Position numbers and translations under genes: made by a program | Notes under the pieces: generated by a model | What the model saw: only the letters and a program-made list of their open reading frames with translations | The model's database searches: none | Told to the model about the DNA's origin: nothing | Shown here: one piece after another, positions 684-58,245 of the stretch | How the letters are laid out: each line of letters begins with the position of its first letter | How positions within the stretch are numbered: the stretch's first letter is position 1 | IMG/VR virus record: IMGVR_UViG_3300020154_000003 | Span: 124,001 to 188,000 of that record | DNA: 64,000 nucleotides | Strand: one strand, 5' to 3'

Positions 684-977
684 ATGGGTGGTATGAATAA
701 TACCATCCATTTTTTTATGAAACGAAAGAAAGAACCAGTACCAATATTTCGAGATTACGTAGTGTTCTATGAGGTTAAGAATGATAAAAACTCTACCAAA
801 TGGGACATGTTATGGCGAGAAACAGGCGAAAAGGCAGGTGATGTAGAATTTTTTAAAGATAAATTCGACACTTATGTTTATAATGTTTTCCCACAATTTA
901 AGCGTTTAAGCGGGGTTTGGGTTGATCTCAGGAAACTTATAAAAGAAAAATCTGGTCACGACATTGCAAAATTCTAA
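684..977 (+). CDS. hypothetical protein (start may be ATG 717)
   Basis: ORF co-oriented with its neighbours; no recognised motif. Confidence 0.55.
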   Translation: MGGMNNTIHFFMKRKKEPVPIFRDYVVFYEVKNDKNSTKWDMLWRETGEKAGDVEFFKDKFDTYVYNVFPQFKRLSGVWVDLRKLIKEKSGHDIAKF

Positions 978-1002
978 AACATTTTTTAGATTTGCACGTA
1001 TA
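977..1002 (+). promoter_or_regulatory. ECF-type promoter (AAC-N16-CGTA) upstream of the Pth2-like/tRNA operon
   Basis: AAAC at 977-980 and CGTATA at 997-1002, with the same 16-nt spacing as the repeated promoters at 34-54 kb. Confidence 0.6.
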
Positions 1003-1022
1003 TATAGAAAACACCAAAAATC

Positions 1023-1403
1023 ATGAAAAAAGAACTGTAGATTTCCAATCCTAGCGATCTTAAACTGGTAACCATTACCAGACAAGACCTACCAATGGGC
1101 GCAATCATTGCCCAAACAGTACATTCAACAGCATCATTTGCCATCCAGTACCCTGACAAATTTCGTCATTGGGAACAAACATCAAACTACGTAGCGTGTC
1201 TAGCTGCAAAGGATGAGCAAGAACTACTCAAGTATTACGACCGATTAATAAAGGCAGGAGCCGATGTGGTATTATTCCGTGAACCCGACATGGATAACCA
1301 AGCAACATCCCTATGCTTTTACGGCACTCCTGAGTTTCGGAAAATTACAAGCAGTTTACCATTAATGTTCAAGCAGAAGAAGGAGGTGGCTATGGCAGCA
1401 TAA
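1023..1403 (+). CDS. peptidyl-tRNA hydrolase 2 (Pth2)-fold protein with in-frame TAG at codon 6 (1038-1040)
   Basis: From ATG 1023 reads MKKEL*ISNPSDLKLVTITRQDLPMGAIIAQTVH...FREPDMDNQATSLC. The Pth2 N-terminal strand (KLVxxxRxDL...AQxxH) lies upstream of the ORF-track start at 1095 and in frame with it. Confidence 0.75.
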
Positions 1404-1411
1404 TTTCACAT

Positions 1412-1486
1412 CCTTTGGTAGCTTAAGCTGGTTAAAGCCCATGACTGATCCTCATGGAGATGGTTGTTCGAATCGGCCCCAAAGGA
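1412..1486 (+). tRNA. tRNA-Ile(GAT), atypical C37/C38, no encoded CCA
   Basis: Cloverleaf: acceptor CCTTTGG/CCAAAGG, D stem GCTT/AAGC, anticodon stem CATGA/TCATG with loop CTGATCC, T arm GGTTG-TTCGAAT-CGGCC. Confidence 0.75.
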
Positions 1487-1493
1487 CTTAAAA

Positions 1494-1573
1494 CCTCGTG
1501 TAGCTTAGTGGTCTAAAGCAGCATACTTATAATATGCCTATCGTCTTAAACGGTTCGAATCCTACCACGAGGA
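1494..1573 (+). tRNA. tRNA-Ile(TAT)-like gene with a disrupted/inserted T stem
   Basis: Acceptor CCTCGTG/CACGAGG, anticodon stem GCATA/TATGC with loop CTTATAA, T loop GGTTCGAATCC. The 5' T strand is GT-CTTAAAC-GG instead of the GTAGG needed to pair with CCTAC. Confidence 0.65.
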
Positions 1574-1585
1574 CTTTAAAAAAAT

Positions 1586-1658
1586 GAGAGTATGGCTCAG
1601 TGGTTAGAGCAAGGACTTCTAAACTCCTAGGTCGTGGGTTCGAATCCCACTACTCTCT
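1586..1658 (+). tRNA. amber suppressor tRNA (anticodon CTA at 1619-1621)
   Basis: Acceptor GAGAGTA/TACTCTC, D stem GCTC/GAGC, anticodon stem AGGAC/CTCCT (C.C mismatch at 31-39) with loop TTCTAAA, variable loop AGGTC, T arm GTGGG-TTCGAAT-CCCAC. Confidence 0.8.
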
Positions 1659-1677
1659 CTCAATAAAATAAAAAGTT

Positions 1678-2205
1678 ATGAAAACAATTAGAGAAACAAG
1701 TCAACCAGTAATCGATGCTCTTTTGAAGCATGTCGATCTTTGTGATGATCATTAGATACTTGAACCTTCAGCAGGCTTCGGTAATCTTGCGGATGGAATC
1801 GTAAGAGCGTGTCCTGACATAAAAGTTGATTGTGTCGAATTGAATGAACGCAACGTACAAATTCTCAAGGAGAAAGGGCATAACGTAGTTGGTCGTGACT
1901 TCTTTCACTTCAAAACAGAAAAGAAGTACTGGTACATCATCGCAGCACCAAACTTCAAAGACAATATTGATGTCGAACACATCATGAAGATGTACACACA
2001 TCTTAGTAATGGTGGAACGATAGTATCACTCACATCCCCGTACTGGATGACAGGAAACTCTGAACGTCAGATTAAACTCAGGTACTGGTTAGCAGATAAA
2101 AATTATAAAATTGAAATGCTTCCAGACAACACTTTCATGGAAGATGGTCAGACTGTTCCAACGTGCATTATTGTAATACGTAAATCTTACTGTGATGGGA
2201 ATTGA
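1678..2205 (+). CDS. class I SAM-dependent methyltransferase with in-frame TAG at 1753-1755
   Basis: From ATG 1678 reads MKTIRE...CDDH*ILEPSAGFGNLAD...VDCVELNE...GRDFF...IIAAPNF...GGTIVSL. Motif I (LEPSAGxG) lies upstream of the ORF-track start at 1840 and in frame with it. Confidence 0.8.
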
Positions 2206-2641
2206 AAATAGCAAATATAAACCAGCGAAGAAAGTCTCTCCAATCCAAGTACGATGGAATGAGCCGTTAGGTAAAGCTGAATGTCCGTATGCTTTTAGAT
2301 GGGTGTTAAACCTTTGGGCATTCTCATTTAGAATACACCACTTCGTTAGGTCTGATGATAAGAGACATTTCCATGATCACGGTTGGTGGTTCCTTACGTT
2401 GGTATTGAAAGGTAGTTACGTGGATGTTAGCCCCGATAGGAGAGATCAATTAACCGCAGGTAGCATTAGATTCAGAAAGGCGACACATAAGCATTATGTT
2501 GAAGTACCTGATGGCGGTGTGTGGACATTCTTAATGACAGGCCCAAGTATAAGAAATTGGGGATTTTGGGTGAATGGAAAATTTAAACGACCATTGAAAT
2601 ATTTTCATCGATATGGTCATCCCCCGTGTGACGAACAATAA
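2192..2641 (+). CDS. cupin-like phage protein
   Basis: HHFVRSDDKRHFHDHGW...LKGSY...HKH...WTFLMTGP...WGFW pattern. Confidence 0.6.
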   Translation: MMGIENSKYKPAKKVSPIQVRWNEPLGKAECPYAFRWVLNLWAFSFRIHHFVRSDDKRHFHDHGWWFLTLVLKGSYVDVSPDRRDQLTAGSIRFRKATHKHYVEVPDGGVWTFLMTGPSIRNWGFWVNGKFKRPLKYFHRYGHPPCDEQ

Positions 2642-2664
2642 TTTAAAAACTAAATAATAACGCT

Positions 2665-2700
2665 ATGAAAAACTTATAGAGTATCTCGCGACCACCATAA
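2665..2700 (+). promoter_or_regulatory. putative leader peptide MKNL(TAG)SISRPP(TAA) followed by structured leader
   Basis: ATG AAA AAC TTA TAG AGT ATC TCG CGA CCA CCA TAA; hairpins at 2708-2722, 2723-2750 and 2778-2793. Confidence 0.55.
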
Positions 2701-2809
2701 TTGGGTTATACCGAATCGGTATTATAGTTCCGAAATCAGAAAAAACTATACCAACTTAGTATAATAAATTTAAAAACAGGCAGTATAATGCCTACAAAGA
2801 AAAACAATT

Positions 2810-3268
2810 ATGGAAAATACAATAGAAAAAAGACACATTAACGTGAAGGATGTAAATTATGAATTGATCATCACAACATTGAATCAAATCAAAACTTTCG
2901 TCAAGGAAAACAACTATCAATTCAAAGATGAGAAGGGGTTTGATGAGATCACAAAGGAGAACTTTGAAAAAGCTTGGAATGACTTGAGCAAGAAAAAAAG
3001 AAAGAAATTAGCGTCATACATTTGGGCAGTCACCAATCACCCAACTTTCGCTAAGGTGAATAAATTCTTGCACTTCTTGATGAAGCATTTCATGCATTCA
3101 GATACCAGAATTCGTGTAATCAAATCAGAAAAGGAAATCGCCATTCAAGAAAAACGAAAAATGTATAAGGAAGCTTTAGCGAAAGCGAAGGCAGCTTATG
3201 GAGCATATAAATTAGAGAAGGGCGACTTCTATAAAATAAGATTAGCTAAAAATCAGGGAGTTCAATAA
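2810..3268 (+). CDS. hypothetical basic helical protein downstream of the amber leader
   Basis: 152-aa ORF with an A-rich start context. Confidence 0.75.
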   Translation: MENTIEKRHINVKDVNYELIITTLNQIKTFVKENNYQFKDEKGFDEITKENFEKAWNDLSKKKRKKLASYIWAVTNHPTFAKVNKFLHFLMKHFMHSDTRIRVIKSEKEIAIQEKRKMYKEALAKAKAAYGAYKLEKGDFYKIRLAKNQGVQ

Positions 3269-3915
3269 TGAAAACAAAGGATTTTATAAAAATGCTACAG
3301 GAAGCAGACCCCACAGGTGAAGGCTATATACGCCTCCCTGATGGGGGTGCCCCGTGGTTCGCAGAACAGAAGCCCGGATATTGGGATGGGCCTTATCAGT
3401 ACTTGGAAAAAATTAACCCGGAACAACATGACCATGCAGGGAATTTCAAATTGATTACTTCAACCAAAGGTTATAAGGTGGACATCCATTGTATGGATTT
3501 TTCAAGTATTGTTTGGGATGAAGACGGTGACATGGAAGAGATCAAGAAGCGTATTGCGTTTGATTATGCTGGCTATGGCCCGGACATTAGATCAGAGAAA
3601 GAAGAGCGATGCTGGAAAACAATTGAAGACGAAGCTAAATATGCACGGAACTTACACGAAAAGTCGCTCATTGAATGGACTGATCGTGTCATACGTGATT
3701 ACGTTGACTGTGGATATGAGATACGCCAGCCGTTGGATAAACCTATTGGCTATTATCATTGCATGACTGCACATACTCTATTCACTAAAAAAGTGTTCTG
3801 TCAGGGTGAATGTATGGCCGTTATAATGAGTGGTAAATTTTATCCTGAAAAGGGAGAAAAACATTACGTCTGGAAATACGACCCGGAAAGGGGTAAAGAC
3901 TGGTCTATTCGTTGA
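3268..3915 (+). CDS. hypothetical protein
   Basis: 215-aa ORF coupled to the previous gene (TAATG). Confidence 0.75.
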   Translation: MKTKDFIKMLQEADPTGEGYIRLPDGGAPWFAEQKPGYWDGPYQYLEKINPEQHDHAGNFKLITSTKGYKVDIHCMDFSSIVWDEDGDMEEIKKRIAFDYAGYGPDIRSEKEERCWKTIEDEAKYARNLHEKSLIEWTDRVIRDYVDCGYEIRQPLDKPIGYYHCMTAHTLFTKKVFCQGECMAVIMSGKFYPEKGEKHYVWKYDPERGKDWSIR

Positions 3916-3940
3916 ATCCTTAATTAAGAAATTGAATTTA

Positions 3941-3966
3941 AGAGGCTTTTTTTAGCCTCTTTTTTT
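3941..3966 (+). terminator. intrinsic terminator closing the amber operon
   Basis: AGAGGCT...AGCCTCT followed by a T run. Confidence 0.7.
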
Positions 3967-5171: not shown

Positions 5172-5870
5172 ATGATCATAGGACTCTCCGGGCATATCAA
5201 AAGTGGTAAATCCACAGCAGCCCAATTAATTCAAAGCGAAACCAATAATAAATTTGTTGAGAAATATTTTGCATACAAGTTAAAATTTATTGCCTCTTAC
5301 CTAACTGGTGACCCCATTCAATTGTTTGAAACTCAAGAAGGTAAGGAAGGATATTTGGAAGATTGGGGTATGACAAGGCGAGAAATTCTTCAAAAGCTTG
5401 GTACAGAATCACTCCGAGAAAATTTCGATAAAAACGTTTGGATAAAAGGAGTGTTTGCTGATTATAAACCACAATCAGTATCAGCACCTGCAGCCATATC
5501 TGGCAATCCTCAAATTGAAAAGTATCCTAATTGGATTATCTCCGATGTTCGTTTCCCCAACGAAGCTGACGCGATCAAAACAAAAGGTGGTCTATTACTT
5601 AGGGTTAACCGTCCAGTTGATTTGATATACCCCAATGAATGGAACTCTTATGCTAGTGAAAATAAGGATTCTGAGTTGAGTGAAAAAGGATTCCATGAAT
5701 GGTTATCATATGGCGATACTAAACAGTTTGATTTATTCAAAAAATTAACCCACCCATCAGAAATTGGATTGGATGACTATGAAGATTTTGACTTTATAGT
5801 TGACAATAATGACACCCTAGAATCTTTTCAAGGGAAAATTAAACATATTATTCACACACATTTAAACTAA
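5172..5870 (+). CDS. deoxynucleoside monophosphate kinase (T4 gp1-like)
   Basis: P-loop GHIKSGKST, FAYKLK, REILQKLGTE, IISDVRFPNE, HPSE. Confidence 0.9.
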   Translation: MIIGLSGHIKSGKSTAAQLIQSETNNKFVEKYFAYKLKFIASYLTGDPIQLFETQEGKEGYLEDWGMTRREILQKLGTESLRENFDKNVWIKGVFADYKPQSVSAPAAISGNPQIEKYPNWIISDVRFPNEADAIKTKGGLLLRVNRPVDLIYPNEWNSYASENKDSELSEKGFHEWLSYGDTKQFDLFKKLTHPSEIGLDDYEDFDFIVDNNDTLESFQGKIKHIIHTHLN

Positions 5871-6635
5871 ATGTCTTCACTAACATACGATGTTGCATTT
5901 GCAAAAACGCAACTAAATAAACTGATTCAAATATATGGTGCGCAACCTAATTATACTTGGTCAGTACTTTTATCAAAAATAGAACATCACTCCAATGCAA
6001 TTGCAAGGGGTGAAGACTATGATAGTAATGAGTTTCTTCATAGCGTATGGGTTCAATATTATTCATCTTTATTAAGTGAAAGTTACATTTTGAATCCTAA
6101 TGGGGATGATCGAAATCATTCATATTTGAACACTCCGAATATTGGTTTGGATATTGATGAAGTTTTAGCTGATTGGGTTACTGCTTGGACTAAGTTATAT
6201 AATTTAGAACGTCCAACAGCATGGTCTTTTGATCGTAAAATTTTAGAACGATTTAAGGAAATGGAGAAGGCAGGTACATTGGATGATTTCTATTTAAATT
6301 TAGAACCTAAATCAAAAGGTTGTGATCTTCCCTTTGAACCTGTTTGTTACATCACCTCAAGACCCGTAAAAAGCGAAGTGACTCAAGAATGGTTGCATAA
6401 ACACGGGTTCCCTTCAAAACCAGTTCATACTGTTCCAGTATACGAATCTAAAGTTAAAGTCGCGAAAGAAGCCAACGTAGAAATTTTTGTTGATGATGGA
6501 TGGCACAATTTCAGAGAGTTCAACAAGAACGGCATATGTTGTTATTTGTTTGACGCACTTCACAACCAAAAATATAAAGTAGGACATAAAAGAATTAAAT
6601 CACTAAACGAATTGCCATGTCTGTATTACAAATGA
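5871..6635 (+). CDS. HAD 5'(3')-deoxyribonucleotidase-like protein with N-terminal degenerate DUF5664 (dATP/dGTP diphosphohydrolase)-like segment
   Basis: GLDIDEVLAD, YITSR and FVDD HAD motifs; N-terminus HH..AIARGEDYD...P.GDDR. Confidence 0.7.
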   Translation: MSSLTYDVAFAKTQLNKLIQIYGAQPNYTWSVLLSKIEHHSNAIARGEDYDSNEFLHSVWVQYYSSLLSESYILNPNGDDRNHSYLNTPNIGLDIDEVLADWVTAWTKLYNLERPTAWSFDRKILERFKEMEKAGTLDDFYLNLEPKSKGCDLPFEPVCYITSRPVKSEVTQEWLHKHGFPSKPVHTVPVYESKVKVAKEANVEIFVDDGWHNFREFNKNGICCYLFDALHNQKYKVGHKRIKSLNELPCLYYK

Positions 6636-7252: not shown

Positions 7253-7738
7253 ATGATTGACAACAACTTGGACTACAATACCCTTGTTCAGAGGATGTAT
7301 TGTTTAACACTGTATAATATTAGCCCGATACAACAAGGTATACAATCGCTACATGCAGTTGTGGAGTACGCCAATCATTATGGCGACACACCTTCATACA
7401 AAAGATGGGCTAATGTTGATAAGACGGTAATTATTTTAAATGGTGGCTCATCCATCAGTTTAGAATCTCACATTCTCAACTTAAAAGCAATTGGTGTTGA
7501 TCTTGCAGTATTCAGAGAGCCAGATTTATTCAACGGTATTACTGCAGTTGGCCTCTTGGCAGATGAAAGAATTTGGGATCGAGAAAAATATCCAGATCGA
7601 TTACCACCATTAGAACCAATCAACGGTTTGACACCTGCGATTCATCGCGAATTTGATCTTGAGTTTTTCAAGAAAAGTATCGGAGGCGAAATGAATTTTC
7701 AATTAAAAGAATACTTATCTAAATTAAAATTAGCATAA
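7253..7738 (+). CDS. second Pth2-fold-like phage protein
   Basis: ISPIQQGIQSLHA...KTVIILNGG...FREPDL..ITAV. Confidence 0.6.
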   Translation: MIDNNLDYNTLVQRMYCLTLYNISPIQQGIQSLHAVVEYANHYGDTPSYKRWANVDKTVIILNGGSSISLESHILNLKAIGVDLAVFREPDLFNGITAVGLLADERIWDREKYPDRLPPLEPINGLTPAIHREFDLEFFKKSIGGEMNFQLKEYLSKLKLA

Positions 7739-9325: not shown

Positions 9326-10204
9326 TTACCACATTACTGGTATTAAGTTTCTCAAAAAATCTTTATCCTGAGTGAAAATAGGTGGCTCAACGACTTGCCA
9401 AGTATTTCTCTTGATATAGTACTGGCCAACCCTTTCCAAATTCGGATGTTGATCATCATCTATCAACCATTTAACATTATCTGCAGTTTTAGGATTTTTC
9501 AAAGCAAGTTTGGCACGATCTTCGGGAAGTGCAACCCATGTCTCTTGTTTAAGAATTACCCTTCCTCTTTTTTGACCTACCGGATAATCATTCCAGTTCT
9601 GACCCTTTTTCCAAATCAGGTCTTGAAGTTGATCAGTGCTCTTCCCATTCAATTCCTTGTGTGAATATAGTGATTGAGCAACGGCCTGAATGGAGTTTCT
9701 GGTTGCATCTTGCTGCCTCCAAATGAAGTAATTAATGACTTCCTCTGATGGTGGAATGGTAAATAACCTGCTGTCAAACATTGCTGTTTTAAAATTTTCA
9801 ATATCCTCTGCAATCGGTATTAAGGCAGTTTCCTTAAACCAACGAGCAAGTCGTAATTGATTGAATTTAGCGGTAGCGAGACTCGATGAAATGGATGCCA
9901 TTTTCTGAACGTTACCATCAAACCATGCTGAGGTGGTTGTCTTTTCAAAATCACTCAATAGAATCGAAATTTCATCTGACTGGACATAACCAAATTTGGC
10001 TCCTTGAATGTTATCACAGAGATATTTTGTGGTTTCATCCATATCCTTAATTAAGTCCGCATCGAATGGTCGCTTAAGTCCACGAGTATAGGTGTGAAAT
10101 GCCTTCCCATCGATCCTTATCATTGTATAGGTTCTTCTAGGAAGATAGGTTCTACTTCTATCCTCATAATAGGTTTTCATTCTGTCGCCAAGTTCATCTT
10201 TCAT
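9326..10204 (-). CDS. thg1: tRNA(His) guanylyltransferase Thg1 / Thg1-like 3'-5' polymerase
   Basis: RIDGKAFHTYT, YVQSDEIS, FDSR, YFIWRQQDATRNS. Confidence 0.93.
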   Translation of the reverse strand: MKDELGDRMKTYYEDRSRTYLPRRTYTMIRIDGKAFHTYTRGLKRPFDADLIKDMDETTKYLCDNIQGAKFGYVQSDEISILLSDFEKTTTSAWFDGNVQKMASISSSLATAKFNQLRLARWFKETALIPIAEDIENFKTAMFDSRLFTIPPSEEVINYFIWRQQDATRNSIQAVAQSLYSHKELNGKSTDQLQDLIWKKGQNWNDYPVGQKRGRVILKQETWVALPEDRAKLALKNPKTADNVKWLIDDDQHPNLERVGQYYIKRNTWQVVEPPIFTQDKDFLRNLIPVMW

Positions 10205-10503: not shown

Positions 10504-11379
10504 ATGACACTAATATTAGACCTCACCAAAGGAGTCACCGAAACCACAGCATACAAAGCATGGAAATTTCCGGGTGGCGAAATTCACTTCAAGTTCTCAG
10601 ATGAATTTATACGTTGGCTAAATTCTCACAGATCGCTCGAAATTCAGACCAGAATAAACACCTCAGATGATTTTCTGTTTTTACTTCTAGTAATTGATAC
10701 GTTGAAGAAGGATTATCAGAATCACACCATCGATGTTTTCATCCCTTATATGCTTTACCAGCAAGCAGATAGAGATTTCAGTGTTGGCGAATGTTTTAGT
10801 CTCAGAACTGTAACCAAAATTCTGAATGCCATTGGTGTAAATTCATACACGATTTACGATCCCCACTCAGATGTTACTCCAGCTTTACTTCAGAACTGTA
10901 AGGTTATCGACAATAGCGATTACATCAAATGGGTGCTTGAGCAACTACCTTCATTAGGTAAATATTCCAATGGATTCAACGTTGTTATGCTTTCCCCCGA
11001 TGCTGGTGCATATAAGAAAATCTATAAACTCGCCAATAAAATTCAATTCAAGGGTGAGGTTGCGTCAGCCAATAAATCTCGTTCGATTTCAACTGGAAAT
11101 ATAGACTCATTGGAACTGTCGAAACATGATTTCGAAGGTAAGGATGTGTTGATTGTTGATGACATCTGTATCGGTGGTAGAACCTTTATTGAACTAGCAA
11201 AGAAGTTGAAGGAACGGAATGTTGGTGATTTATATCTCGCAATTTCTCACGGCATTTTTAGTAACGGATATGATGAACTAAGTCTCTACTACAAAAAGGT
11301 ATTCACTACTAACAGTAGAAAAAATGAATACAATCACGAATTAATTTCAACCTTTAACATTTTTGGCGATAATGACTGA
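10504..11379 (+). CDS. ribose-phosphate pyrophosphokinase-like protein (candidate NARP1 Adps)
   Basis: FPGGEIH, PYMLYQQADR, DPHSDV, SPDAGA, IVDDICIGGRTF, HGIFS. Confidence 0.88.
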   Translation: MTLILDLTKGVTETTAYKAWKFPGGEIHFKFSDEFIRWLNSHRSLEIQTRINTSDDFLFLLLVIDTLKKDYQNHTIDVFIPYMLYQQADRDFSVGECFSLRTVTKILNAIGVNSYTIYDPHSDVTPALLQNCKVIDNSDYIKWVLEQLPSLGKYSNGFNVVMLSPDAGAYKKIYKLANKIQFKGEVASANKSRSISTGNIDSLELSKHDFEGKDVLIVDDICIGGRTFIELAKKLKERNVGDLYLAISHGIFSNGYDELSLYYKKVFTTNSRKNEYNHELISTFNIFGDND

Positions 11380-11791: not shown

Positions 11792-12213
11792 TAGTATTTG
11801 TGGCGACTCCATTTTGGAGTTTTGATAAAGAAGTGTCTGAACGAAGAACTGCGATAATAAGCAAGTATTGCGGGCAATTATTGCGTGAGGGTATTATGTG
11901 TACTTCGCCAGTTGTTTTTGGAGTAACTATACTGAAATATACTGACCTACCGGGAAATTTTGCCTTTTGGGATAAACTTAGTTTTACCACTTTGGCAGCT
12001 TCAGATGTGCTACACGTACTTATGCTCCCCGGATGGGATGAATCGAGAGGCGTTAGTGAGGAAATAAAATTCGCACTAGAAAGAAAAATACCAATAAAAT
12101 ATTTTGATGTTTCCGAAGATAGATATGGCAGTCCCACTTTCAAAGAAAATAGCAGATCAATAGCTATTGGCAACCTAATAAGAAAAATTAATCATAAAAA
12201 AAATAACCCATGA
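11788..12213 (+). CDS. DUF1937 / nucleoside 2-deoxyribosyltransferase-like protein
   Basis: VATPF...SPV...FW...LMLPGWDESRGVSEEIKFA. Confidence 0.7.
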   Translation: MIVFVATPFWSFDKEVSERRTAIISKYCGQLLREGIMCTSPVVFGVTILKYTDLPGNFAFWDKLSFTTLAASDVLHVLMLPGWDESRGVSEEIKFALERKIPIKYFDVSEDRYGSPTFKENSRSIAIGNLIRKINHKKNNP

Positions 12214-13781
12214 AAATGAATCCATTTTTAATGGCTGACTTTTACAAGATCGGTCACCCATTTCAATACCCCAAAGGTACAAATCTTGTTTATGCTAACT
12301 TAACACCACGTAATTCCAGAATCAAGGGAGTTGACAAGATGGTGTTCTTTGGCCTTCAATATTTTATCAAGCATTACTTGATTAAGTATTTCAACGAAAA
12401 CTTCTTCGATCTTCCGAAAGACGAAGTGATGAATTCATACAGAAGAAGAATTCTCACCTCATTAGGTTCCGATCTACCTTATTATGATCACATTGCAAAT
12501 CTTCACGATTTGGGTTATCTCCCAATCGAGATTAAAGCTTTGCCAGAAGGAAGCAAGGTGAAGATGCGTGTGCCAGTACTGACTGTCAAAAATACACACC
12601 CTGAATTTTATTGGTTGACCAATTTCATAGAAACAATCATGTCCGATATTGTGTGGCAACCATGTACCTCCGCTACTATTGCCCACGAATACCGTAAACT
12701 TCTCAACAAGTTTGGTGAAGAAACTGGTATGCACCCCGACTTTATTCAATGGCAAGGTCACGACTTCAGCTTTAGAGGTATGAGTTCCTTCGAGAGTGCA
12801 TATACTTCAGCTATGGGGCACTTATTATCTTTTACTGGCACTGACACCATTCCGGGGATTGATGCTCTTGAAACGTATTACAATGCTAATGCGGATTACG
12901 AATTAATTGGTGGTAGTGTCAATGCTACCGAACACAGTGTTATGTGTGCTGGTGAAAAGGATTCAGAGTACGAGACTTACAGACGTTTGATCTGTGATGT
13001 ATACCCTAAAGGCATCGTATCAATTGTTTCAGATACTTGGGATTTATGGTTCGTACTAACTCAGATCATACCTCAATTGAAAGAAGCGATTCTCAATAGG
13101 GAAGGTAAGGTTGTTATTCGTCCTGACAGTGGCGATCCTGTTAAAATTCTTACAGGTTACTTCAAGAACGAATTGACTGTGATCGATGGCAAATATTACC
13201 GTAACACTGATGTTGATGCTCATGATATTGACGCAACTAAGCTAACGCTTAAAGCAGGTGCCAAAGAAGTTGGTGAAGCTGAAAGAAAAGGTGTTATTGA
13301 GGTTCTTTGGGACGTGTTTGGTGGAACCATCACTGACAAAGGTTACAAACTACTGGACGAACATATTGGGGCAATTTACGGTGACAGTATCACACTTACT
13401 CGTGCAGAAGAAATTTGTCAGCGATTGAAAGATAAGGGATTTGCTTCACAAGTTGTACTTGGTATCGGTAGCTACACTTATCAGTACAACACCAGAGATA
13501 CCTTTGGTACTGCAATGAAGTCTACCTATGTTGAAGTTAACGGTGAAGGAAGAGAAATTTTCAAATCTCCTGCGACTGATGATGGAACTAAAAAATCTGC
13601 CAGAGGCTTGCTGAAAGTTGTGAAAGATGAGGACGGTGAATTCGTACTTGTAGATCAGGTGTCTTGGGAAGAAGAGGCTGAGGGAGAATTAACACCAGTC
13701 TTTAAGGATGGTAAGTTACTTGTTGACCAGTCATTGAGCGAAATAAGGGCAAGATTGAGTGAAGTAGTAGAGGTAGTATAA
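12210..13781 (+). CDS. nicotinamide phosphoribosyltransferase-like protein (candidate NARP1 Namat)
   Basis: ADFYKIGH..QYP, HDFSFRG, ATEHSVM, SIVSDTWD, IRPDSGDP, IYGDSIT, K.P.TD.G.KKSARG. Confidence 0.92.
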   Translation: MKMNPFLMADFYKIGHPFQYPKGTNLVYANLTPRNSRIKGVDKMVFFGLQYFIKHYLIKYFNENFFDLPKDEVMNSYRRRILTSLGSDLPYYDHIANLHDLGYLPIEIKALPEGSKVKMRVPVLTVKNTHPEFYWLTNFIETIMSDIVWQPCTSATIAHEYRKLLNKFGEETGMHPDFIQWQGHDFSFRGMSSFESAYTSAMGHLLSFTGTDTIPGIDALETYYNANADYELIGGSVNATEHSVMCAGEKDSEYETYRRLICDVYPKGIVSIVSDTWDLWFVLTQIIPQLKEAILNREGKVVIRPDSGDPVKILTGYFKNELTVIDGKYYRNTDVDAHDIDATKLTLKAGAKEVGEAERKGVIEVLWDVFGGTITDKGYKLLDEHIGAIYGDSITLTRAEEICQRLKDKGFASQVVLGIGSYTYQYNTRDTFGTAMKSTYVEVNGEGREIFKSPATDDGTKKSARGLLKVVKDEDGEFVLVDQVSWEEEAEGELTPVFKDGKLLVDQSLSEIRARLSEVVEVV

Positions 13782-15552: not shown

Positions 15553-16153
15553 AAAAAATGTGTGGAAGCCAGCTTCTCTGGATGTGATGCGTCAAATTGC
15601 AAACGCTGAGAAAGATTGGGCATCCTTACTGAAATCGGAGAACACATATAAAAAATTTTTCAAGAAATTGCTTTTTTGGCGTAAACCAAAAACACAATTC
15701 GAAGGAGTTACGTTTCCGGTAGTAAGAAAAGTCTTTGCTAATTTGATGGCTAACGATATTGTTGGAGTACAACCAATGGCAGCACCATCCAATGGTCTTT
15801 ATGCGAATTACATCACAATAACATTCAAACTTGGGAAACCAATTAAGCATAAAATTGTTGGAAAGACACCCGGAGAATATTTAATAAATTTAATACATGC
15901 TTGGAATAGTTTGCCTGATCGATTTGTGAAAGAGGACATTGTTGGTTACTATCACTATAAACTCGCGGCACTGCTTAAGGTTTATCCTACCATCCTCGAT
16001 GAGTATGAAACTGACGATTACACAAAAGATTTGATGTTTGTATTGGAAGGACAGAAGCCCAAACATAAATTTGAAGGTTACAAACCGATACCCCAAATTT
16101 TAAATGGTAATGATGGACATATACCGTTATGGCCTATTCCAAATAAAATATAG
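15539..16153 (+). CDS. protein containing a T4 gp23 major-capsid (Gol-region)-like segment
   Basis: FPVVRKVFANLMANDIVGVQPMAAPSNG. Confidence 0.65.
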   Translation: MFVSKKNVWKPASLDVMRQIANAEKDWASLLKSENTYKKFFKKLLFWRKPKTQFEGVTFPVVRKVFANLMANDIVGVQPMAAPSNGLYANYITITFKLGKPIKHKIVGKTPGEYLINLIHAWNSLPDRFVKEDIVGYYHYKLAALLKVYPTILDEYETDDYTKDLMFVLEGQKPKHKFEGYKPIPQILNGNDGHIPLWPIPNKI

Positions 16154-16157
16154 CAAA

Positions 16158-16997
16158 ATGAAGACTAACAAAAAACAAAAACATATTGCAGTATTATTTT
16201 CCTCAGGATTGGATTCAACATATCTCATCTATAAAAATCTGAAGGAAGGACATATAGTCCAACCCTATTATGTTGACATTAAAAACAATGAGAATAAGCG
16301 GATAGTGGAATTGCAAAACGTGCAGAAGTTAACTGAATTATTCATTGAGGAATTTCCAAACATGCGATTCCATAAAACGTTGACTGAAGTTTCGGTTAAT
16401 ATTGAATGGGGTTGCGATCTTTTATTCACACAAATCCCTGTGTGGTTGTTTAGTTTATCTTTCATAAGCAATCCGAATGTTCAGGAAATTCATATCGGTT
16501 ATGTTTCAAACGATGATGCAATTTCTTATATAGATGAAATAAAGAAATTTTATAAAGCACAGCAGTGGTTACATAGAGATAAACTTCCTAAACTTTGTTT
16601 CCCGCTTTTGAAAGAAACGAAATCAAGTATGATGGAGGAACTACCAGTAAAGTACAGAACCTATATTACTTCTTGTGAAAATCCAACTTTAAAACCATAT
16701 TTTATTAAAAGTGGAAGTCGAAGAATCCAGTACTTCGAACCTTGTGGTACATGTGTCGCTTGTAATAGGGTTATAAGAGAAAAATTAGATTACAATTTTC
16801 AATATAGAAAACTCATAGTAGATCACTATAAAAAATTGGAGGAAGCACAATATTTTGCACGATTTAAAGAGCATCATCCCAAAGAATATGATGGGATTTT
16901 GAAACTCATTGAAGAAACGAATAGTAATGCTTTTGAGCAGGTGTGGATAGAATCAGGTGGGGATGTTAAAGGAGGTTATGAAGCTGTAGGATGTTGA
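16158..16997 (+). CDS. QueC-like PP-loop ATPase
   Basis: AVLFSSGLDSTY, TSC, PCGTCVAC. Confidence 0.7.
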   Translation: MKTNKKQKHIAVLFSSGLDSTYLIYKNLKEGHIVQPYYVDIKNNENKRIVELQNVQKLTELFIEEFPNMRFHKTLTEVSVNIEWGCDLLFTQIPVWLFSLSFISNPNVQEIHIGYVSNDDAISYIDEIKKFYKAQQWLHRDKLPKLCFPLLKETKSSMMEELPVKYRTYITSCENPTLKPYFIKSGSRRIQYFEPCGTCVACNRVIREKLDYNFQYRKLIVDHYKKLEEAQYFARFKEHHPKEYDGILKLIEETNSNAFEQVWIESGGDVKGGYEAVGC

Positions 16998-30523: not shown

Positions 30524-32487
30524 TTCATTTCAGTGTACTTAAAAGAAATCAATGCAAGTAAAGCACCACGCTTAAACCAAAACTTACTGTGCTTTGTAGG
30601 TGCATAGGTACGCTTTACTTTAGCATTCATTTCCATAGTCGATAGTACTGGCCGCAAAGCAAACAAGTGTCAAGCGGCTTCGTTTATATTTTTTTATAAA
30701 TTTTTTCAAAAACCCGCTTCTCAATACTCATAAAGAATATCTCCCTGCGTACAACCAGTACCAGATTAGATAATATTCGTTTAACCGTTTTCATTTTCTG
30801 TGGTGTTTATTTGCCTTACAAAATCCATAGCCTTCTTCGTTTCCTCCACAATGTACTTCTCACTCACTGGCCCTATGGTTATACTCATGCCCGGACGCAA
30901 TAAAGGTGCCTCGATCTTAATTATATATGGGGTATTCTTAACTGTCTTTGCCATGTTTTTATTTATTCAATTCAATCTCCTGTTTTTCAAGCAAACCCAA
31001 ACCCCTCATAAAATCCTGCTTCGCTTCATCAAAATATCTGGTGGCAGATTCACCATACTCATACCCAAGCAATGTACAAAGGTATCTGGCTGCATCCACA
31101 CTGTTACCCTCAAGTTCAATGTCCCCACCCGAACTATCCTTAAACACCAAGCTGAAATATACCAACTTGTCGTTCGCCTTGTCATCATCCTCATTCACAG
31201 GATGACCAACCTGAATGGCACATTCCCTCCTAAAGAAATTCAACACATCCCTCTTATAATACTCCGCTTTCAAATATTTCATATCCAGTACCTTTGTTTA
31301 TTTTCTAAACTTCCAACTATCATTTATGCCAGACCAATTACTGGCCCGCGATAACTCCATCTGATTTCCAATCTCACGCGACTCGTAATAAAACTGAACG
31401 TCCCTGCGATCCTGAGCACTCAAACTCGCCAGTACCTTCTTCGCTCTGGCAATACGCTCTTCATTCTCACGCTTCATGCGTTCACGCCATTGCTCAACCG
31501 TCTCTTCCATATCCAGTACTGGTTTATTTTATCGTTTTCTTCTGTCAGACCAACCTTCAAATGTCCAAACAGGTAAGGACGTATCCTTCTCAGGTAAAGC
31601 CAGTACCCGTTCCAAATCACTCTGACCGTCCGACCTTTTCTCTAACTGGCTTTCAGCCAAATATCCCCAAATGTGACCTGTCTTTTCTTCCATCACAAAA
31701 GGTACATACCAGCCCCTGTGGTCACCGTCCAGACATGCGTTGCACATTACTCGCTCCTGTCTGAAGAACTCGCCATACGGCCTGTATAAGCGAACCTGCG
31801 TGTCCTTGCAACCGTGACAGATATATTTTGCCATATCAAGTACTGGTTTAAGCTTTGTATCTGCAAACTTCCTGCGAAGTAAGAACCTTATTCAAAAGCT
31901 TCTCCTTCAATTCCATAAGATTCATACGCTCCTTGCGCAATGCATCTTCATCTGCCTGCAACTCTTCCAGCTTTTTCCAAACGTGCTTGTTTGTTGCTAT
32001 GGTGAAAACACCAGCACCTCCAAAGACCACAAGAAACCCTGCAACAACAAGCGCAGGCAAAATAAAGCCCCAATTCAAGGATACAAAGTCGATTGGCTTC
32101 TGTGACCAAATACTGATCGCCACAACAGCTATAAACATGGTGGCGATAATAGACATCGTGGCACAAATTTTATAAAGCGTTCTCATTTTTATTATTTATT
32201 TAACAGTAATTGAAACCTTTCTCCAATCTGTCTCAGTGACAGAACATGACCAGTTGGCATCTTCTATGATATTGCTCCCGATCATGTCGCAAAGAAATAG
32301 GTACACAATGGGCCTATCAGAATAATCTGCCAGATAATTCTCCAACCCTCCAGTTTCCCTGTCAAAAGCTTCCTTGAGACCATTCTCTCTGGCCAATTCA
32401 ACAATGGTAGTGTAAACCTTGGGCTTTAATGTGACCTTTTTCATTTTGTTGCGTTTATTCTATTATACGCAGAAAAATGTATATTGT

Positions 32488-33579
32488 TTAGGATTTTGTA
32501 ACCGTAAGGGTAACCTTATGGGATTGCATCACATTGAACTCACGCTCAATTACTTTGTACCTTTTTTCACCAACGTTGATCACATCACCCTTGTTTGGTA
32601 CAACATCAGCAATATATTCAACGATGGGAGAATCACTACTGCTATCCAAATAACCCCTTACCGTGATGTTGAACATCCCCGGTCTACGAGCCTTGAAATC
32701 CATATCCTCCTTGGTGATGAAATTAACTTTCTCACGATTCAAATGGCTGGATGGCATCTCATGATTGATCACAGGTTGATCAGTACCAATACGCCCAATC
32801 TTGCTCCTGTATTCAGGAGAAGTATACGCTTTGACAGCTTGGTCAGCATCCAGACAATTCACGCCCGGAATAGGTTTCATATCGTAAGACACCTTCCTTG
32901 AAACCTGTAAATCAACCCCCGAATCAGGATGGAATTCACCATACAGGGAATTCTTCTCAGATTTTAATCCAGTACCATCCGCTTTTTGAGGAATTTCCAC
33001 GATCTCGATCTTGGGTGTGGAACGCAAGAAGTTAGCAACCTCCTTGGAGAATTCCGGGGTACGCTCAGGTTCCTTGTAAACAAGTTCCTGAAACTTAAGA
33101 CTCTGCAGCGAACTGTGCAAAATGTGGGTCAGTACCTGAAGACCAGTACCTGCCTTCCCAACAATGGCAACTTGGAATTTGTCATCGACCTTTTTCATGG
33201 TTGAAATTATTTCGGGTAAAAGATGATTATTATAATAGTTTTCAGCACCCTCTAACGCATCATGAATGGTTGCGTACTTGTGCTGGACTGTGGTAGCCCC
33301 GTTAAGGTGAGATTCGCTTTTGGGATGCGTGATCTGATAGCCCCACATCGGATTGCCAGTACTAGTAGAAAAATCCTCATAGATCACAGAAACCAGATGG
33401 TCATCCAAAAACCCGACTTTAGCATAATCAGGTACTGGCCTGAATACAGCCTTGGCATTGCGATAATTCCTTTCAGCTTCCTGCCTTGCTTCGGTTATGC
33501 TGGTTCCATATTGGATTCTGACCTTATTATTCATCTTGTTTTGTTTGTAATCGTGATAATGTTTCTGCGTGTAAGGCAT
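32488..33579 (-). CDS. hypothetical protein
   Basis: 363-aa ORF downstream of an AAC-N16-CGTATA motif (~33605-33630). Confidence 0.7.
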   Translation of the reverse strand: MPYTQKHYHDYKQNKMNNKVRIQYGTSITEARQEAERNYRNAKAVFRPVPDYAKVGFLDDHLVSVIYEDFSTSTGNPMWGYQITHPKSESHLNGATTVQHKYATIHDALEGAENYYNNHLLPEIISTMKKVDDKFQVAIVGKAGTGLQVLTHILHSSLQSLKFQELVYKEPERTPEFSKEVANFLRSTPKIEIVEIPQKADGTGLKSEKNSLYGEFHPDSGVDLQVSRKVSYDMKPIPGVNCLDADQAVKAYTSPEYRSKIGRIGTDQPVINHEMPSSHLNREKVNFITKEDMDFKARRPGMFNITVRGYLDSSSDSPIVEYIADVVPNKGDVINVGEKRYKVIEREFNVMQSHKVTLTVTKS

Positions 33580-56611: not shown

Positions 56612-57208
56612 TCACTTTTTATAATCCCATCCAGTAAGGATGGCGTGTTTATGTTTTGCTTCCACCCAAGTTTTAGGGGATATAAACTTATCTAACCAAA
56701 AATCATCATAGGCCATACGCATTTGTTTTGCTGCTTGTCCGAAGGGCATTGCACCGACACCAGTACAGAATCCGCTCATTGTTATGGAATTAATATTACG
56801 GTCAGGAGCATATTCTTTTAGGGTTAGGAATACAGCACGGGCAGCGAGATAGGCATTCAATGTATCTGGAACGAACAATGGAATTCGCATTGTTGGGGCT
56901 ACGATACACCAAGGAATATCTGTATGAGTGGTATCCACCAGAATTGCTTGGCCAACCAAGAGTTCTCCACTATAATAGTTTCTTATTATGTTTTGAACTT
57001 TAGTTTGTAGTTGCCAACCGAATCTTTTTGAAATAACCAGATCAAGGCCACCATCCATATATCCGAACGAATTAGCGGGAGAAACGATACAATCTACTTT
57101 TTGGGAGAAGAAATCACCATGTATGACATTTACGTCATTTTCACCGTGGAATTCTTTTCTCCACATTTCGACCATTTCTTCGTTTCTATCTATTAGGTAG
57201 AACTTCAT
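56612..57208 (-). CDS. macrodomain (ADP-ribose processing) protein
   Basis: IVSPANSFGYMDGGLD, APTMR, GFCTGVG. Confidence 0.9.
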   Translation of the reverse strand: MKFYLIDRNEEMVEMWRKEFHGENDVNVIHGDFFSQKVDCIVSPANSFGYMDGGLDLVISKRFGWQLQTKVQNIIRNYYSGELLVGQAILVDTTHTDIPWCIVAPTMRIPLFVPDTLNAYLAARAVFLTLKEYAPDRNINSITMSGFCTGVGAMPFGQAAKQMRMAYDDFWLDKFISPKTWVEAKHKHAILTGWDYKK

Positions 57209-57819: not shown

Positions 57820-58245
57820 TTAAAACAATTCCAGTTTACTAGTGATTTCATCTACTTCATCTGACCATGCAGGCCCGATTGCGCAGCAGGTGATGGTTGG
57901 TACGCCATTAAACTCGGTCAGTCCTGCATCTTTAATTAAGGAACATGGTAATCCTTTCTGTCTTGCAGCCCCATAGAGTGCCATAATTTCTTCTTCGGTT
58001 TCGACCACACAGCAGATTTTGGTGAAGATACCTGTAATCCAGTTATGTATTGCACTTTCTTTATCCAAGGTCAATACCAAATTATCCCAATCATTAGCAC
58101 CTTTTACAAATTCACCAGAGTCAAGAATTGCCTTCAGGGATGCATGGGCACCTTGGCCGATATACTTTCCTTTTCTTGGGGTGACTTTCTTTCCATCGAC
58201 AACGAAGGATTTACGCATCACTATGACTTGTTTGCTTACTTTCAT
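57820..58245 (-). CDS. pth2: peptidyl-tRNA hydrolase Pth2
   Basis: KQVIVMRK...KGK..GQGAHAS...TKI...DAGLTEF...T.TCCAIGP...VDEITSKLEL. Confidence 0.9.
   Translation of the reverse strand: MKVSKQVIVMRKSFVVDGKKVTPRKGKYIGQGAHASLKAILDSGEFVKGANDWDNLVLTLDKESAIHNWITGIFTKICCVVETEEEIMALYGAARQKGLPCSLIKDAGLTEFNGVPTITCCAIGPAWSDEVDEITSKLELF

What the first reader, a model, noticed from the sequence alone, without database searches (positions are those of the whole stretch)
977..3966. Local amber-readthrough-gated operon: a CUA tRNA flanked by three frames with an in-frame TAG
Seen: a tRNA gene with anticodon CTA (1586-1658). Within about 1.1 kb of it, three frames carry one internal TAG each: the Pth2-like gene (ATG 1023, TAG 1038), the methyltransferase (ATG 1678, TAG 1753, immediately before SAM motif ILEPSAG) and the leader MKNL*SISRPP (TAG 2677). 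In the two enzyme genes, conserved motifs sit between the TAG and the next ORF-track start, so intact protein appears to need readthrough. All three are TAG-A, and the frames end in TAA/TGA. Long genes elsewhere (523 and 672 aa) have no internal TAG, and TAG is still used as a stop (16151, 18042, 23474). Established: whole-genome TAG recoding and suppressor tRNAs occur in phages, and a purine at +4 favours suppression. Inference: this is a conditional translational switch, on only when suppressor tRNA accumulates or RF1 is limited. It would couple translation-rescue genes to readthrough, with positive coupling because the tRNA appears to be co-transcribed.
Basis: partly seen in the sequence, partly recalled or inferred. 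Interest (0 to 1): 0.95.

Follow-up and report, generated by a model that had tools for sequence, protein, structure and literature searches.

The report
Amber-gated genes flanking a suppressor tRNA
A giant phage places a stop-codon-reading tRNA between two enzyme genes that each carry that same stop codon near their start, and this layout is conserved and repeatedly re-evolved in many phages that otherwise use the normal code, so these genes are probably made only when the phage's own suppressor tRNA works.

Summary
Two of the three reported frames are real. The tRNA-CUA (1586-1658) is a canonical tRNA. It sits between a Pth2-like gene (ATG 1023, in-frame TAG 1038) and a small adenine-methyltransferase-like gene (ATG 1678, in-frame TAG 1753). 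The third frame, the leader at 2666-2701, is a chance mini-ORF.

Comparative data turn this into a strong finding. Every close relative of the Pth2-like gene has ATG, then 1-8 codons, then a stop, before the conserved domain. This holds in about 28 metagenomic loci, 22 of 40 IMG/VR loci, five huge-phage genomes and the cultured Tenacibaculum phage pT24. A matching suppressor tRNA usually lies within 2 kb.

One lineage carries tRNA-UUA and has TAA in both genes. The methyltransferase gained an in-frame stop at least five separate times.

The stops are local. I found no other recoded gene in 93 kb of this genome, in 790 kb of related loci, or in the complete pT24 genome, and TAG still ends about 9-12% of genes.

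My best reading is a private, suppressor-dependent translational gate. Its purpose is inferred, not shown. I found no description in the literature searched. I rate it a new variant of stop-codon recoding, and it can be tested in pT24.

The parts
1023..1403 (+). Pth2-like gene of the 'EPD' subtype, 126 codons including one in-frame TAG at codon 6
   Evidence: Pfam PF01981 scores 31.4 bits against a cut-off of 23. A profile of 16 homologues matches solved Pth2 structures at E 2.6e-9. The leader-plus-stop architecture is conserved in all close homologues.
1038..1040 (+). Gating amber codon 1 (TAG followed by ATT)
   Evidence: The same TAG is present in the independent assembly L083.
1412..1574 (+). 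tRNA-Ile(GAU) at 1412-1487 and tRNA-Ile(UAU) at 1494-1574
1586..1658 (+). Amber suppressor tRNA, anticodon CUA, class I with a 5-nt variable loop and U at the discriminator position
   Evidence: ARAGORN, Rfam at 67.1 bits, sequence read.
1678..2205 (+). Small SAM methyltransferase, 175 codons including an in-frame TAG at codon 26. It is a gamma-class N6-adenine-type core with no target-recognition domain.
   Evidence: Pfam N6_Mtase and PHROGs. AF2 model of relative P0002 has pLDDT 87.7. Foldseek gives TM 0.74-0.79 to the M.TaqI catalytic domain and about 0.7 to Dim1/KsgA/ErmC.
1753..1755 (+). Gating amber codon 2 (TAG followed by ATA), directly before motif I
   Evidence: The same column is a TAG in L001, L085, L146 and L147.
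2195..2641 (+). Small metal-cupin gene overlapping the methyltransferase stop by 11 nt, so it may be translationally coupled. It is conserved downstream of the methyltransferase in relatives.
   Evidence: phrog_4786. Homologues are 55-84% identical and have no Pfam match. Model pLDDT 87.6; best Foldseek matches are TM1459-like cupins. Gene order seen.
2810..3915 (+). Two further ORFs of unknown function (2810-3268 and 3268-3915) before the next terminator-like hairpin
   Evidence: no informative family.
3940..3961 (+). Terminator-like hairpin with a T run. The previous + strand terminator-like site is at 683-711.

Best explanation
This is a suppressor-tRNA cassette in a 366-kb jumbo phage that otherwise uses the standard code. 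The phage encodes an amber suppressor tRNA(CUA). The two genes on either side of it each carry one early in-frame UAG. A ribosome starting at ATG 1023 or ATG 1678 is released by RF1 after 5 or 25 residues unless the phage tRNA decodes the UAG.

The full-length Pth2-like hydrolase and methyltransferase are therefore made only when the suppressor is transcribed, matured, charged and able to compete with RF1. Through the overlapping start, the downstream cupin may depend on it too. The UAG acts as a private codon that ties these genes to suppressor activity.

Shown:
- The stops are real, conserved and selected.
- They match the linked tRNA's anticodon.
- They are confined to these genes.

Inferred:
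- That they are read through by this tRNA.
- That the gate sets timing or dosage. Most plausibly it makes an enzyme that handles (peptidyl- or aminoacyl-)tRNA only when suppression is active, or it feeds back on the level of suppression.
- The inserted amino acid is unknown.
For: - **Conserved leader in the Pth2-like gene.** All Pth2-like homologues of this subfamily in the MTase-anchored loci (about 28 loci, 36-100% identity) have ATG, 1-8 codons and a stop, with no canonical start before the conserved KLxxVTRxDL strand. The same holds in cultured phage pT24 and in huge phages LR745206 and LR756500/1/2/4. It holds in 22 of 40 independent IMG/VR loci, 19 of which have tRNA-CUA within 6 kb.
- **Anticodon-stop covariation.** L112/L114 carry tRNA-UUA and have TAA, not TAG, in both the Pth2-like gene (codon 9) and the MTase (codon 130).
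- **Repeated gain in the MTase.** Its in-frame stops sit at codons 10 (twice), 17, 26 and 130, each in a separate clade. No MTase gene ends in TAG.
- **Selection upstream of the stop.** In class B the pre-TAG segment shows 267 synonymous against 199 non-synonymous differences in frame, compared with 86/403 and 29/467 in the shifted frames.
- **The stops are local.** Code-11 coding density is 0.86-0.93 with no gain when TAG is read as sense. A tblastn census of 790 kb of loci found robust in-frame stops only in the MTase; it cannot see the very short Pth2 leaders. In the complete pT24 genome the Pth2-like gene is the only one needing UAG decoding.
- **Context.** All gating stops are followed by a purine. 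Terminator TAGs are 40-47% purine at +4, with T commonest.
- **Specificity.** Ungated paralogues in this window (7253-7738, 57820-58245) and in PVP-SE1, VH7D and Aeromonas phage 65 have no suppressor tRNA beside them.
Against: - There is no direct evidence of readthrough: no proteomics or ribosome profiling.
- The codon after the stop is nearly always Ile or Val (ATT, ATA, GTA, GTG). That would also fit re-initiation at a near-cognate codon after a mini-ORF. In Mycobacterium Bixzunavirus phages the annotated start is the GTG directly after 'ATG TAG', with a well-spaced Shine-Dalgarno sequence.
- About 273 kb of this phage's contig was not examined, so late genes there could be recoded.
- Three gated IMG/VR loci, three huge-phage loci and a few MTase-anchored loci (L113, L145) show no suppressor tRNA within the flanks fetched.
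- The window tRNA has a C31-C39 mismatch and an unusual U discriminator. Its charging is unknown.
Confidence: 0.7

Rival explanations
1. Block-wise code change (genetic code 15 type). The phage reassigns TAG in part of its genome, for example in late genes, and these two genes are simply among many recoded genes.
For: Suppressor tRNAs and TAG recoding of late genes are established in crAss-like and Lak phages (papers listed). This genome has two CUA tRNAs. Only about 93 of 366 kb was read. A public gene caller chose code 15 for the short contigs L146 and L147.
Against: There is no coding-density gain with TAG read as sense in the window, its flanks or 18 related loci. TAG ends 13 of 152 ORFs here. 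Complete pT24 has all structural and replication genes intact in code 11, 38 TAG terminators, and no excess of TAG-separated in-frame ORF pairs. The homology census found no other interrupted gene.
Confidence: 0.1
2. Leader mini-ORF with termination and re-initiation. The 1-8-codon ORF ends at the stop, and ribosomes restart at the adjacent Ile/Val codon. The suppressor tRNA would be linked for another reason.
For: The codon after the stop is ATT, ATA, GTA or GTG in about 90% of cases. In Bixzunavirus phages a GTG start with a good Shine-Dalgarno spacing follows 'ATG TAG' directly. Mini-ORFs of 2-3 codons recall the lambda bar minigenes, whose effect depends on Pth (my own knowledge).
Against: It does not explain why the stop is TAA exactly where the linked tRNA is UUA, or why suppressor tRNAs co-occur at all. 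GTA is not a known start codon. In the MTase, the 9-25 conserved residues upstream of the stop include invariant R5 and T7 and evolve as part of the protein. A stop at codon 130 (L114) cannot be a leader.
Confidence: 0.12
3. Decay or error. The TAGs are nonsense mutations in dying genes, or sequencing errors.
For: Each gene has a single stop in this one genome.
Against: The same stops occur in dozens of diverged genomes from unrelated samples and assemblers. An independent assembly agrees. There is purifying selection on both sides of the stop, and no frameshifts or extra stops.
Confidence: 0.01
4. Pyrrolysine-type decoding. ARAGORN labels the tRNA 'Pyl', and a CUA tRNA next to a methyltransferase with an in-frame UAG superficially resembles the pyl system.
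For: The ARAGORN label and the UAG in a methyltransferase gene.
Against: The tRNA is canonical: D-loop GG, TTCGAAT T-loop, 5-nt variable loop and 67 bits to the general tRNA model. It lacks the compact features of tRNA-Pyl (my own knowledge). The enzyme is a class I SAM methyltransferase, not an MtmB-type protein. No PylS or PylBCD was seen among the proteins I scanned, though I did not search for them exhaustively.
Confidence: 0.01

Closest known systems
Stop-codon-recoded phages (TAG read as Gln, 'code 15': crAss-like, Lak and related phages; PMC9523058, PMC10879173, PMC11210395)
   Same: A phage-encoded CUA suppressor tRNA. In-frame TAG in phage genes while the host uses the standard code. 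A proposed role in timing of expression.
   Different: There, tens to hundreds of genes (typically late blocks) are recoded, coding density rises under code 15, and TAG is not used as a terminator in those blocks. Here only one or two genes next to the tRNA carry the stop, and TAG remains a normal terminator. The inserted residue is unknown. The 'Q' in database relatives comes from code-15 translation, not from a sense codon.
prfB (RF2) autoregulation through an early in-frame stop (PMC12421855)
   Same: An early in-frame stop codon acts as a sensor of the cell's capacity to decode or terminate at that codon, in a gene of the translation apparatus.
   Different: prfB uses a +1 frameshift and senses its own product. 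Here the frame is kept and the decoding agent is a separate, linked tRNA. Whether the product feeds back on UAG decoding is untested.
Suppressor tRNAs of non-recoded jumbo phages, such as Xanthomonas phage XacN1 (PMC5852040)
   Same: CUA tRNAs in a jumbo phage that uses the standard code.
   Different: The XacN1 authors read through terminal amber codons and found no targets. The XacN1 suppressor tRNAs are not flanked by these genes. Here the targets are identified: early in-frame stops in the neighbouring genes.
PTH2 genes of jumbo phages (Iyer et al. 2021, PMC7824862)
   Same: An archaeo-eukaryotic-type peptidyl-tRNA hydrolase fold, encoded among tRNA and RNA-repair genes.
   Different: That survey does not mention suppressor tRNAs or stop codons. 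The gated gene belongs to a divergent subfamily with an E-P-D motif where canonical Pth2 has D-A-G-x-T.
Lambda bar minigenes and Pth (my own knowledge, not checked in a paper here)
   Same: A two- to few-codon ORF followed by a stop, with a functional link to peptidyl-tRNA hydrolase.
   Different: bar minigenes are free-standing and toxic in Pth-deficient hosts. Here the mini-ORF is fused in frame to a Pth2-like gene and linked to a suppressor tRNA.

Membership tests
Genome- or block-wise TAG-recoded phage (code 15) | Suppressor tRNA(CUA) encoded by the phage | tested here: met
Genome- or block-wise TAG-recoded phage (code 15) | Many genes interrupted by TAG; coding density rises when TAG is read as sense | tested here: not met
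   Window density is 0.898 against 0.905. Flanks and 18 loci show no gain. pT24 is 0.933 against 0.923. The census found only the MTase. About 273 kb of this contig was not read.
Genome- or block-wise TAG-recoded phage (code 15) | TAG not used as a terminator in the recoded part | tested here: not met
   13 of 152 ORFs end in TAG in the window, and 38 of 310 in pT24
Programmed, tRNA-dependent stop-codon readthrough of a specific gene | The in-frame stop is conserved in homologues, with coding constraint on both sides | tested here: met
Programmed, tRNA-dependent stop-codon readthrough of a specific gene | A cognate decoding agent is present and covaries with the stop type | tested here: met
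   TAG with CUA in most loci; TAA with UUA in L112/L114
Programmed, tRNA-dependent stop-codon readthrough of a specific gene | A full-length product containing an amino acid at the stop position | not testable with these tools
   Needs mass spectrometry or reporters
PTH2 peptidyl-tRNA hydrolase (PF01981) | Sequence and profile match over the whole domain | tested here: met
   Pfam 31.4 bits against a cut-off of 23. The profile matches 2zv3 at E 2.6e-9 over positions 1-101.
PTH2 peptidyl-tRNA hydrolase (PF01981) | Canonical active-site motif D-A-G-x-T | tested here: not met
   It is replaced by an invariant E-P-D ... T. The window's other PTH2 gene (57820-58245) keeps DAGLT.
PTH2 peptidyl-tRNA hydrolase (PF01981) | Hydrolysis of peptidyl-tRNA | not testable with these tools
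   Needs an enzyme assay
Gamma-class N6-adenine methyltransferase (N6_Mtase, M.TaqI-like) | SAM-binding motif I and a class I Rossmann fold | tested here: met
   ILEPSAGFG. Model pLDDT 87.7. TM 0.74-0.79 to M.TaqI.
Gamma-class N6-adenine methyltransferase (N6_Mtase, M.TaqI-like) | Motif IV (D/N/S)PP(Y/F) | tested here: inconclusive
   The window has A-P-N-F. Relatives have APPF or CPTF.
Gamma-class N6-adenine methyltransferase (N6_Mtase, M.TaqI-like) | Target-recognition domain and a DNA substrate | tested here: not met
   The protein is 175 aa, catalytic core only. The substrate (DNA, rRNA, tRNA or protein) is unknown. Erm, KsgA, RsmC-like and HemK also match weakly.
Pyrrolysine system | Compact tRNA-Pyl architecture plus PylS and PylBCD | tested here: not met
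   Canonical tRNA. No Pyl genes among the proteins scanned. The search was not exhaustive.

The most novel reading that the evidence does not exclude
The EPD-type Pth2-like protein is a dedicated partner of the suppressor tRNA. It might deacylate or hydrolyse (peptidyl- or aminoacyl-)tRNA-CUA, or otherwise act at UAG-paused ribosomes. Its leader UAG would then be an autoregulatory sensor, so the cassette works as a homeostat that sets how strongly UAG is suppressed in an infected cell. The linked methyltransferase, which acquired matching stops at least five times, and the cupin would form a small 'suppressor regulon'. This would be a self-contained, portable module for a controlled, partial change of the genetic code. 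It is found from Bacteroidota jumbo phages to 735-kb huge phages, with at least the Pth2-tRNA linkage extending to mycobacteriophages.
Probability: 0.3. Interest if true: 0.9.

Novelty: new variant of a known kind. Interest (0 to 1): 0.8.

Why it matters
Suppressor tRNAs are common in large phages that do not use an alternative code, and their targets have been an open question. The XacN1 authors stated they could find none. A Klebsiella phage paper calls the purpose unknown.

This finding names concrete targets: one or two genes beside the tRNA, each with an early matching stop.

Three lines of evidence show the dependence is selected for:
- covariation of anticodon and stop type;
- at least five independent gains of a stop in the methyltransferase;
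- near-universal conservation of the leader-plus-stop architecture in the gated Pth2-like subfamily.

It also has practical consequences:
- Standard annotation truncates these genes. In pT24, BPT24_235 is annotated from an internal start.
- Code-15 gene callers write a 'Q' in protein databases that is not evidence for glutamine.
- The gate offers a natural, compact design in which a gene is expressed only if a given tRNA is active.
- It is directly testable in the cultured phage pT24.

Tried and rejected
1. **'TAG = Gln'.** The closest database homologues show Q at both TAG positions. I rejected this because their contigs carry TAG there and were translated with code 15. At DNA level the aligned residues in stop-free relatives vary (S, K, R, L, T, E). 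The suppressor tRNAs are heterogeneous in acceptor stem and discriminator. The inserted residue is therefore unknown.
2. **Third gated frame (2666-2701).** Not conserved.
3. **Other candidate N-terminal TAGs in the window** (17628 and 34583). The upstream segments do not look coding, and the real starts are plausible. The frequency of 'TAG upstream with an ATG leader' matches that of the TAA and TGA controls.
4. **XacN1 as a cultured example.** Its suppressor tRNAs are flanked by unrelated genes.
5. **Gated gene beside the second CUA tRNA** (about 460 nt upstream of the window). None found.
6. **Backup stops after terminator TAGs.** No enrichment.
7. **Function of the cupin.** Only generic small metal-cupin matches.
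8. **IMG/VR scan with the 16-sequence Pth2 alignment.** It failed for lack of a conserved stretch and was repeated with 7 sequences.
9. **Nucleotide search against cultured phages.** Only the tRNA matched.

Note on method: window proteins were always searched as pieces on either side of the stop. The structure model of the methyltransferase used database protein P0002 as first sequence. P0002 later proved to be a code-15 translation with Q at the TAG position.


Full report
**What is in the window**

The window is positions about 124,001-188,000 of a 366,038-bp metagenomic contig (JGI 3300020154, Ga0196965_1000004). It has 38% GC, and no cultured phage matches at nucleotide level except through the tRNA. 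The region is a tRNA and RNA-maintenance island:
- 20 tRNAs lie in the 20 kb around the finding.
- RNA ligase and PNKP lie just upstream of the window.
- Thg1, NAMPT, PRPP synthase and a QueC-like gene lie inside it.
- A Macro-domain gene lies next to a canonical PTH2 gene.

**The observation**

ARAGORN and Rfam agree on a canonical tRNA with anticodon CUA at 1586-1658. Upstream, ATG 1023 opens a frame that hits TAG at 1038 and then continues without a canonical start codon into the first strand of a PTH2 domain. Downstream, ATG 1678 opens a frame that hits TAG at 1753, directly before SAM motif I of a small methyltransferase. The first canonical starts after the stops, at 1095 and 1840, would delete conserved parts of both proteins. 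The third frame reported, at 2666-2701, is an 11-codon mini-ORF that is not conserved in the nearest relative, so I drop it.

**Are the stops real and selected?**

I searched the pieces on either side of each stop separately.
- Relatives of the methyltransferase from a Logan assembly (L001), IMG/VR (L002) and 62 metagenome loci show an in-frame TAG in the N-terminal part at three different codons: 26 as in the window, 17 in about 20 loci, and 10 in two unrelated lineages. All are followed by a purine, and none of these genes ends in TAG.
- A maximum-likelihood tree places the stop classes in separate clades. That implies at least five independent gains, counting a TAA at codon 130.
- Synonymous changes dominate upstream of the stop only in the gene's own frame. 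The leader is therefore translated as part of the protein, and the TAG itself stays invariant while its neighbours drift.
- For the Pth2-like gene the pattern is stronger still. Every homologue in these loci has ATG, 1-8 codons and a stop before the conserved domain. An independent assembly of the window's own phage has the same TAG.

**Link to the tRNA**

Nearly all stop-bearing loci carry tRNA-CUA 0.2-1 kb upstream of the methyltransferase. Methyltransferase relatives without a stop mostly lack any suppressor tRNA. The decisive case is L112/L114, from a 447-kb contig. There the linked tRNA has anticodon UUA, and both genes carry TAA instead of TAG.

An independent sample anchored on the Pth2-like protein gave 40 IMG/VR loci.
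- 22 have the leader-plus-TAG architecture, and 19 of those have tRNA-CUA within 6 kb.
- Eight of the 18 ungated ones still have tRNA-CUA directly downstream.

The Pth2-like/tRNA-CUA pair is therefore the conserved core, and the amber gate is a frequent addition. The same architecture occurs in five huge-phage genomes of 462-735 kb and in the cultured Tenacibaculum phage pT24. In Mycobacterium Bixzunavirus phages the Pth gene lies 250 nt from a CUA tRNA. Its annotated GTG start is directly preceded by ATG TAG, but a well-placed Shine-Dalgarno sequence suggests the GTG is used there.

**Local or genome-wide?**

- In the window, code-11 ORFs cover 90% of the sequence, and reading TAG as sense adds nothing.
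- TAG terminates 13 of 152 ORFs.
- Two 10-kb extensions of the contig behave the same way.
- A tblastn census across 790 kb of related loci found homology-supported in-frame stops only in the methyltransferase.
- The complete pT24 genome (234,670 bp) has 93% coding density in code 11 and intact structural and replication genes. It has 38 TAG terminators and no excess of TAG-separated in-frame ORF pairs. Exactly one gene has conserved coding sequence between a TAG and its first canonical start: the Pth2-like gene, which the public annotation truncates.

This is not code-15-type recoding, at least in pT24 and in the quarter of this genome that I could read.

**What the genes are**

- *Pth2-like gene.* It is a true PTH2-fold relative, but it has an invariant E-P-D motif where canonical enzymes have D-A-G-x-T. 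The window holds two more PTH2-fold genes, both ungated: a canonical one at 57820-58245 and another EPD-type one at 7253-7738. Homologues of the latter in PVP-SE1, VH7D and Aeromonas phage 65 have no tRNA beside them. The gated copy is therefore a specialised paralogue.
- *Methyltransferase.* It models confidently as a gamma-class N6-adenine methyltransferase core without a recognition domain. It is closest to the M.TaqI catalytic domain, then to Dim1/KsgA/Erm. Its substrate is open.
- *Downstream gene.* It overlaps the methyltransferase stop and is a small metal cupin of unknown function.
- *Transcription unit.* No terminator-like site lies between 711 and 3940 on the + strand.

**Mechanism**

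The best-supported mechanism is suppressor-dependent translation. RF1 releases a 5- or 25-residue peptide unless the phage tRNA-CUA reads the UAG. The +4 purine found at every gating stop is the context known to favour amber suppression (my own knowledge). Terminator TAGs in the same genomes most often have T at +4.

I could not establish which amino acid is inserted. The 'Q' in database relatives is an artefact of code-15 gene calling, and the tRNAs are heterogeneous.

The near-constant Ile or Val codon after the stop is unexplained. It keeps a re-initiation model alive, although that model cannot account for the TAA/UUA covariation or for the stop at codon 130.

The purpose of the gate is inference. 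The options are timing, coupling a tRNA-handling enzyme to active suppression, or feedback on the level of suppression.

**Novelty**

Full-text searches found recoded phages, theta ribozymes next to suppressor tRNAs, prfB autoregulation and PTH2 in jumbo phages. They found no description of early matching stops in the genes beside a phage suppressor tRNA. The XacN1 paper states that the targets of its suppressor tRNAs could not be found. I rate this a new variant of stop-codon recoding, with high interest.

Noticed in passing
L084:7863-7936 (about 460 nt upstream of window position 1); L084:1-9982: A second, different tRNA-CUA in the same phage, and an array of 20 tRNAs in 10 kb. No gated gene lies next to the second suppressor.
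   Followed up: partly
window 57820-58245 (-) and 7253-7738 (+): Two more PTH2-fold genes in the same window, both with normal starts and no internal stop. One is canonical with a DAGLT motif, next to a Macro-domain gene (56612-57208). The other is EPD-type, with homologues annotated 'hydrolase' in PVP-SE1, Vibrio VH7D and Aeromonas phage 65.
   Followed up: partly
window 9326-10204 (-), 10504-11379, 12210-13781, 16104-16997; L203:130-1038 and 5482-6597: An RNA-repair and metabolism island: Thg1-like tRNA-His guanylyltransferase, PRPP synthase, NAMPT, a QueC-like gene, and PNKP and RNA ligase just upstream of the window.
   Followed up: no
All gated genes (for example window 1041-1043 and 1756-1758): The codon after the in-frame stop is almost always Ile or Val (ATT, ATA, GTA, GTG), so +4 is a purine and +5 is usually T. 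Phage tRNA-Ile(UAU) genes sit beside the suppressor in the window, L146, L147 and pT24.
   Followed up: partly
L001:9531-9665 and 9690-9840; L001:6157-7825: Two tRNA-like genes after the CUA tRNA appear to be interrupted by inserts of about 60-70 nt (possible introns) and were not called by ARAGORN. An IS605-type Y1 transposase/TnpB pair lies 1.5 kb upstream.
   Followed up: no
L021:7386-7388 (IMG/VR 7.8-kb contig): A distantly related, larger DNA-methyltransferase-like gene also has a TAG directly before VLEPSAG. There is no tRNA on that short contig.
   Followed up: no
L156 (LR756501, 735-kb phage), about 6094: Its Pth2-like gene has a second in-frame TAG inside the domain (FP*IYEQW), and two CUA tRNAs lie 2.4 kb downstream.
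   Followed up: no
L160:2971-2979 and L161:1471-1479 (Mycobacterium phages IkeLoa and Grungle): The annotated GTG start of the peptidyl-tRNA hydrolase is directly preceded by ATG TAG, and a tRNA(cta) lies 250-300 nt downstream. This could be a relic or a variant of the same architecture.
   Followed up: partly
Proteins P0001, P0002, P0122, P0123 (contigs L146, L147): These public protein entries were translated with TAG as Q. In this family a 'Q' in database homologues can hide a stop codon.
   Followed up: yes
L085:3073-3120: A 12-nt unit (GAGGGAATAAAT) repeated four times in tandem at the 3' end of the cupin gene. It is absent from the window.
   Followed up: no
pT24 record 32066-33238 (-): Two adjacent genes annotated 'ABC transporter ATP-binding' are in the same frame, separated by a TGA and 24 codons. 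This may be a split gene or a TGA-interrupted gene.
   Followed up: no
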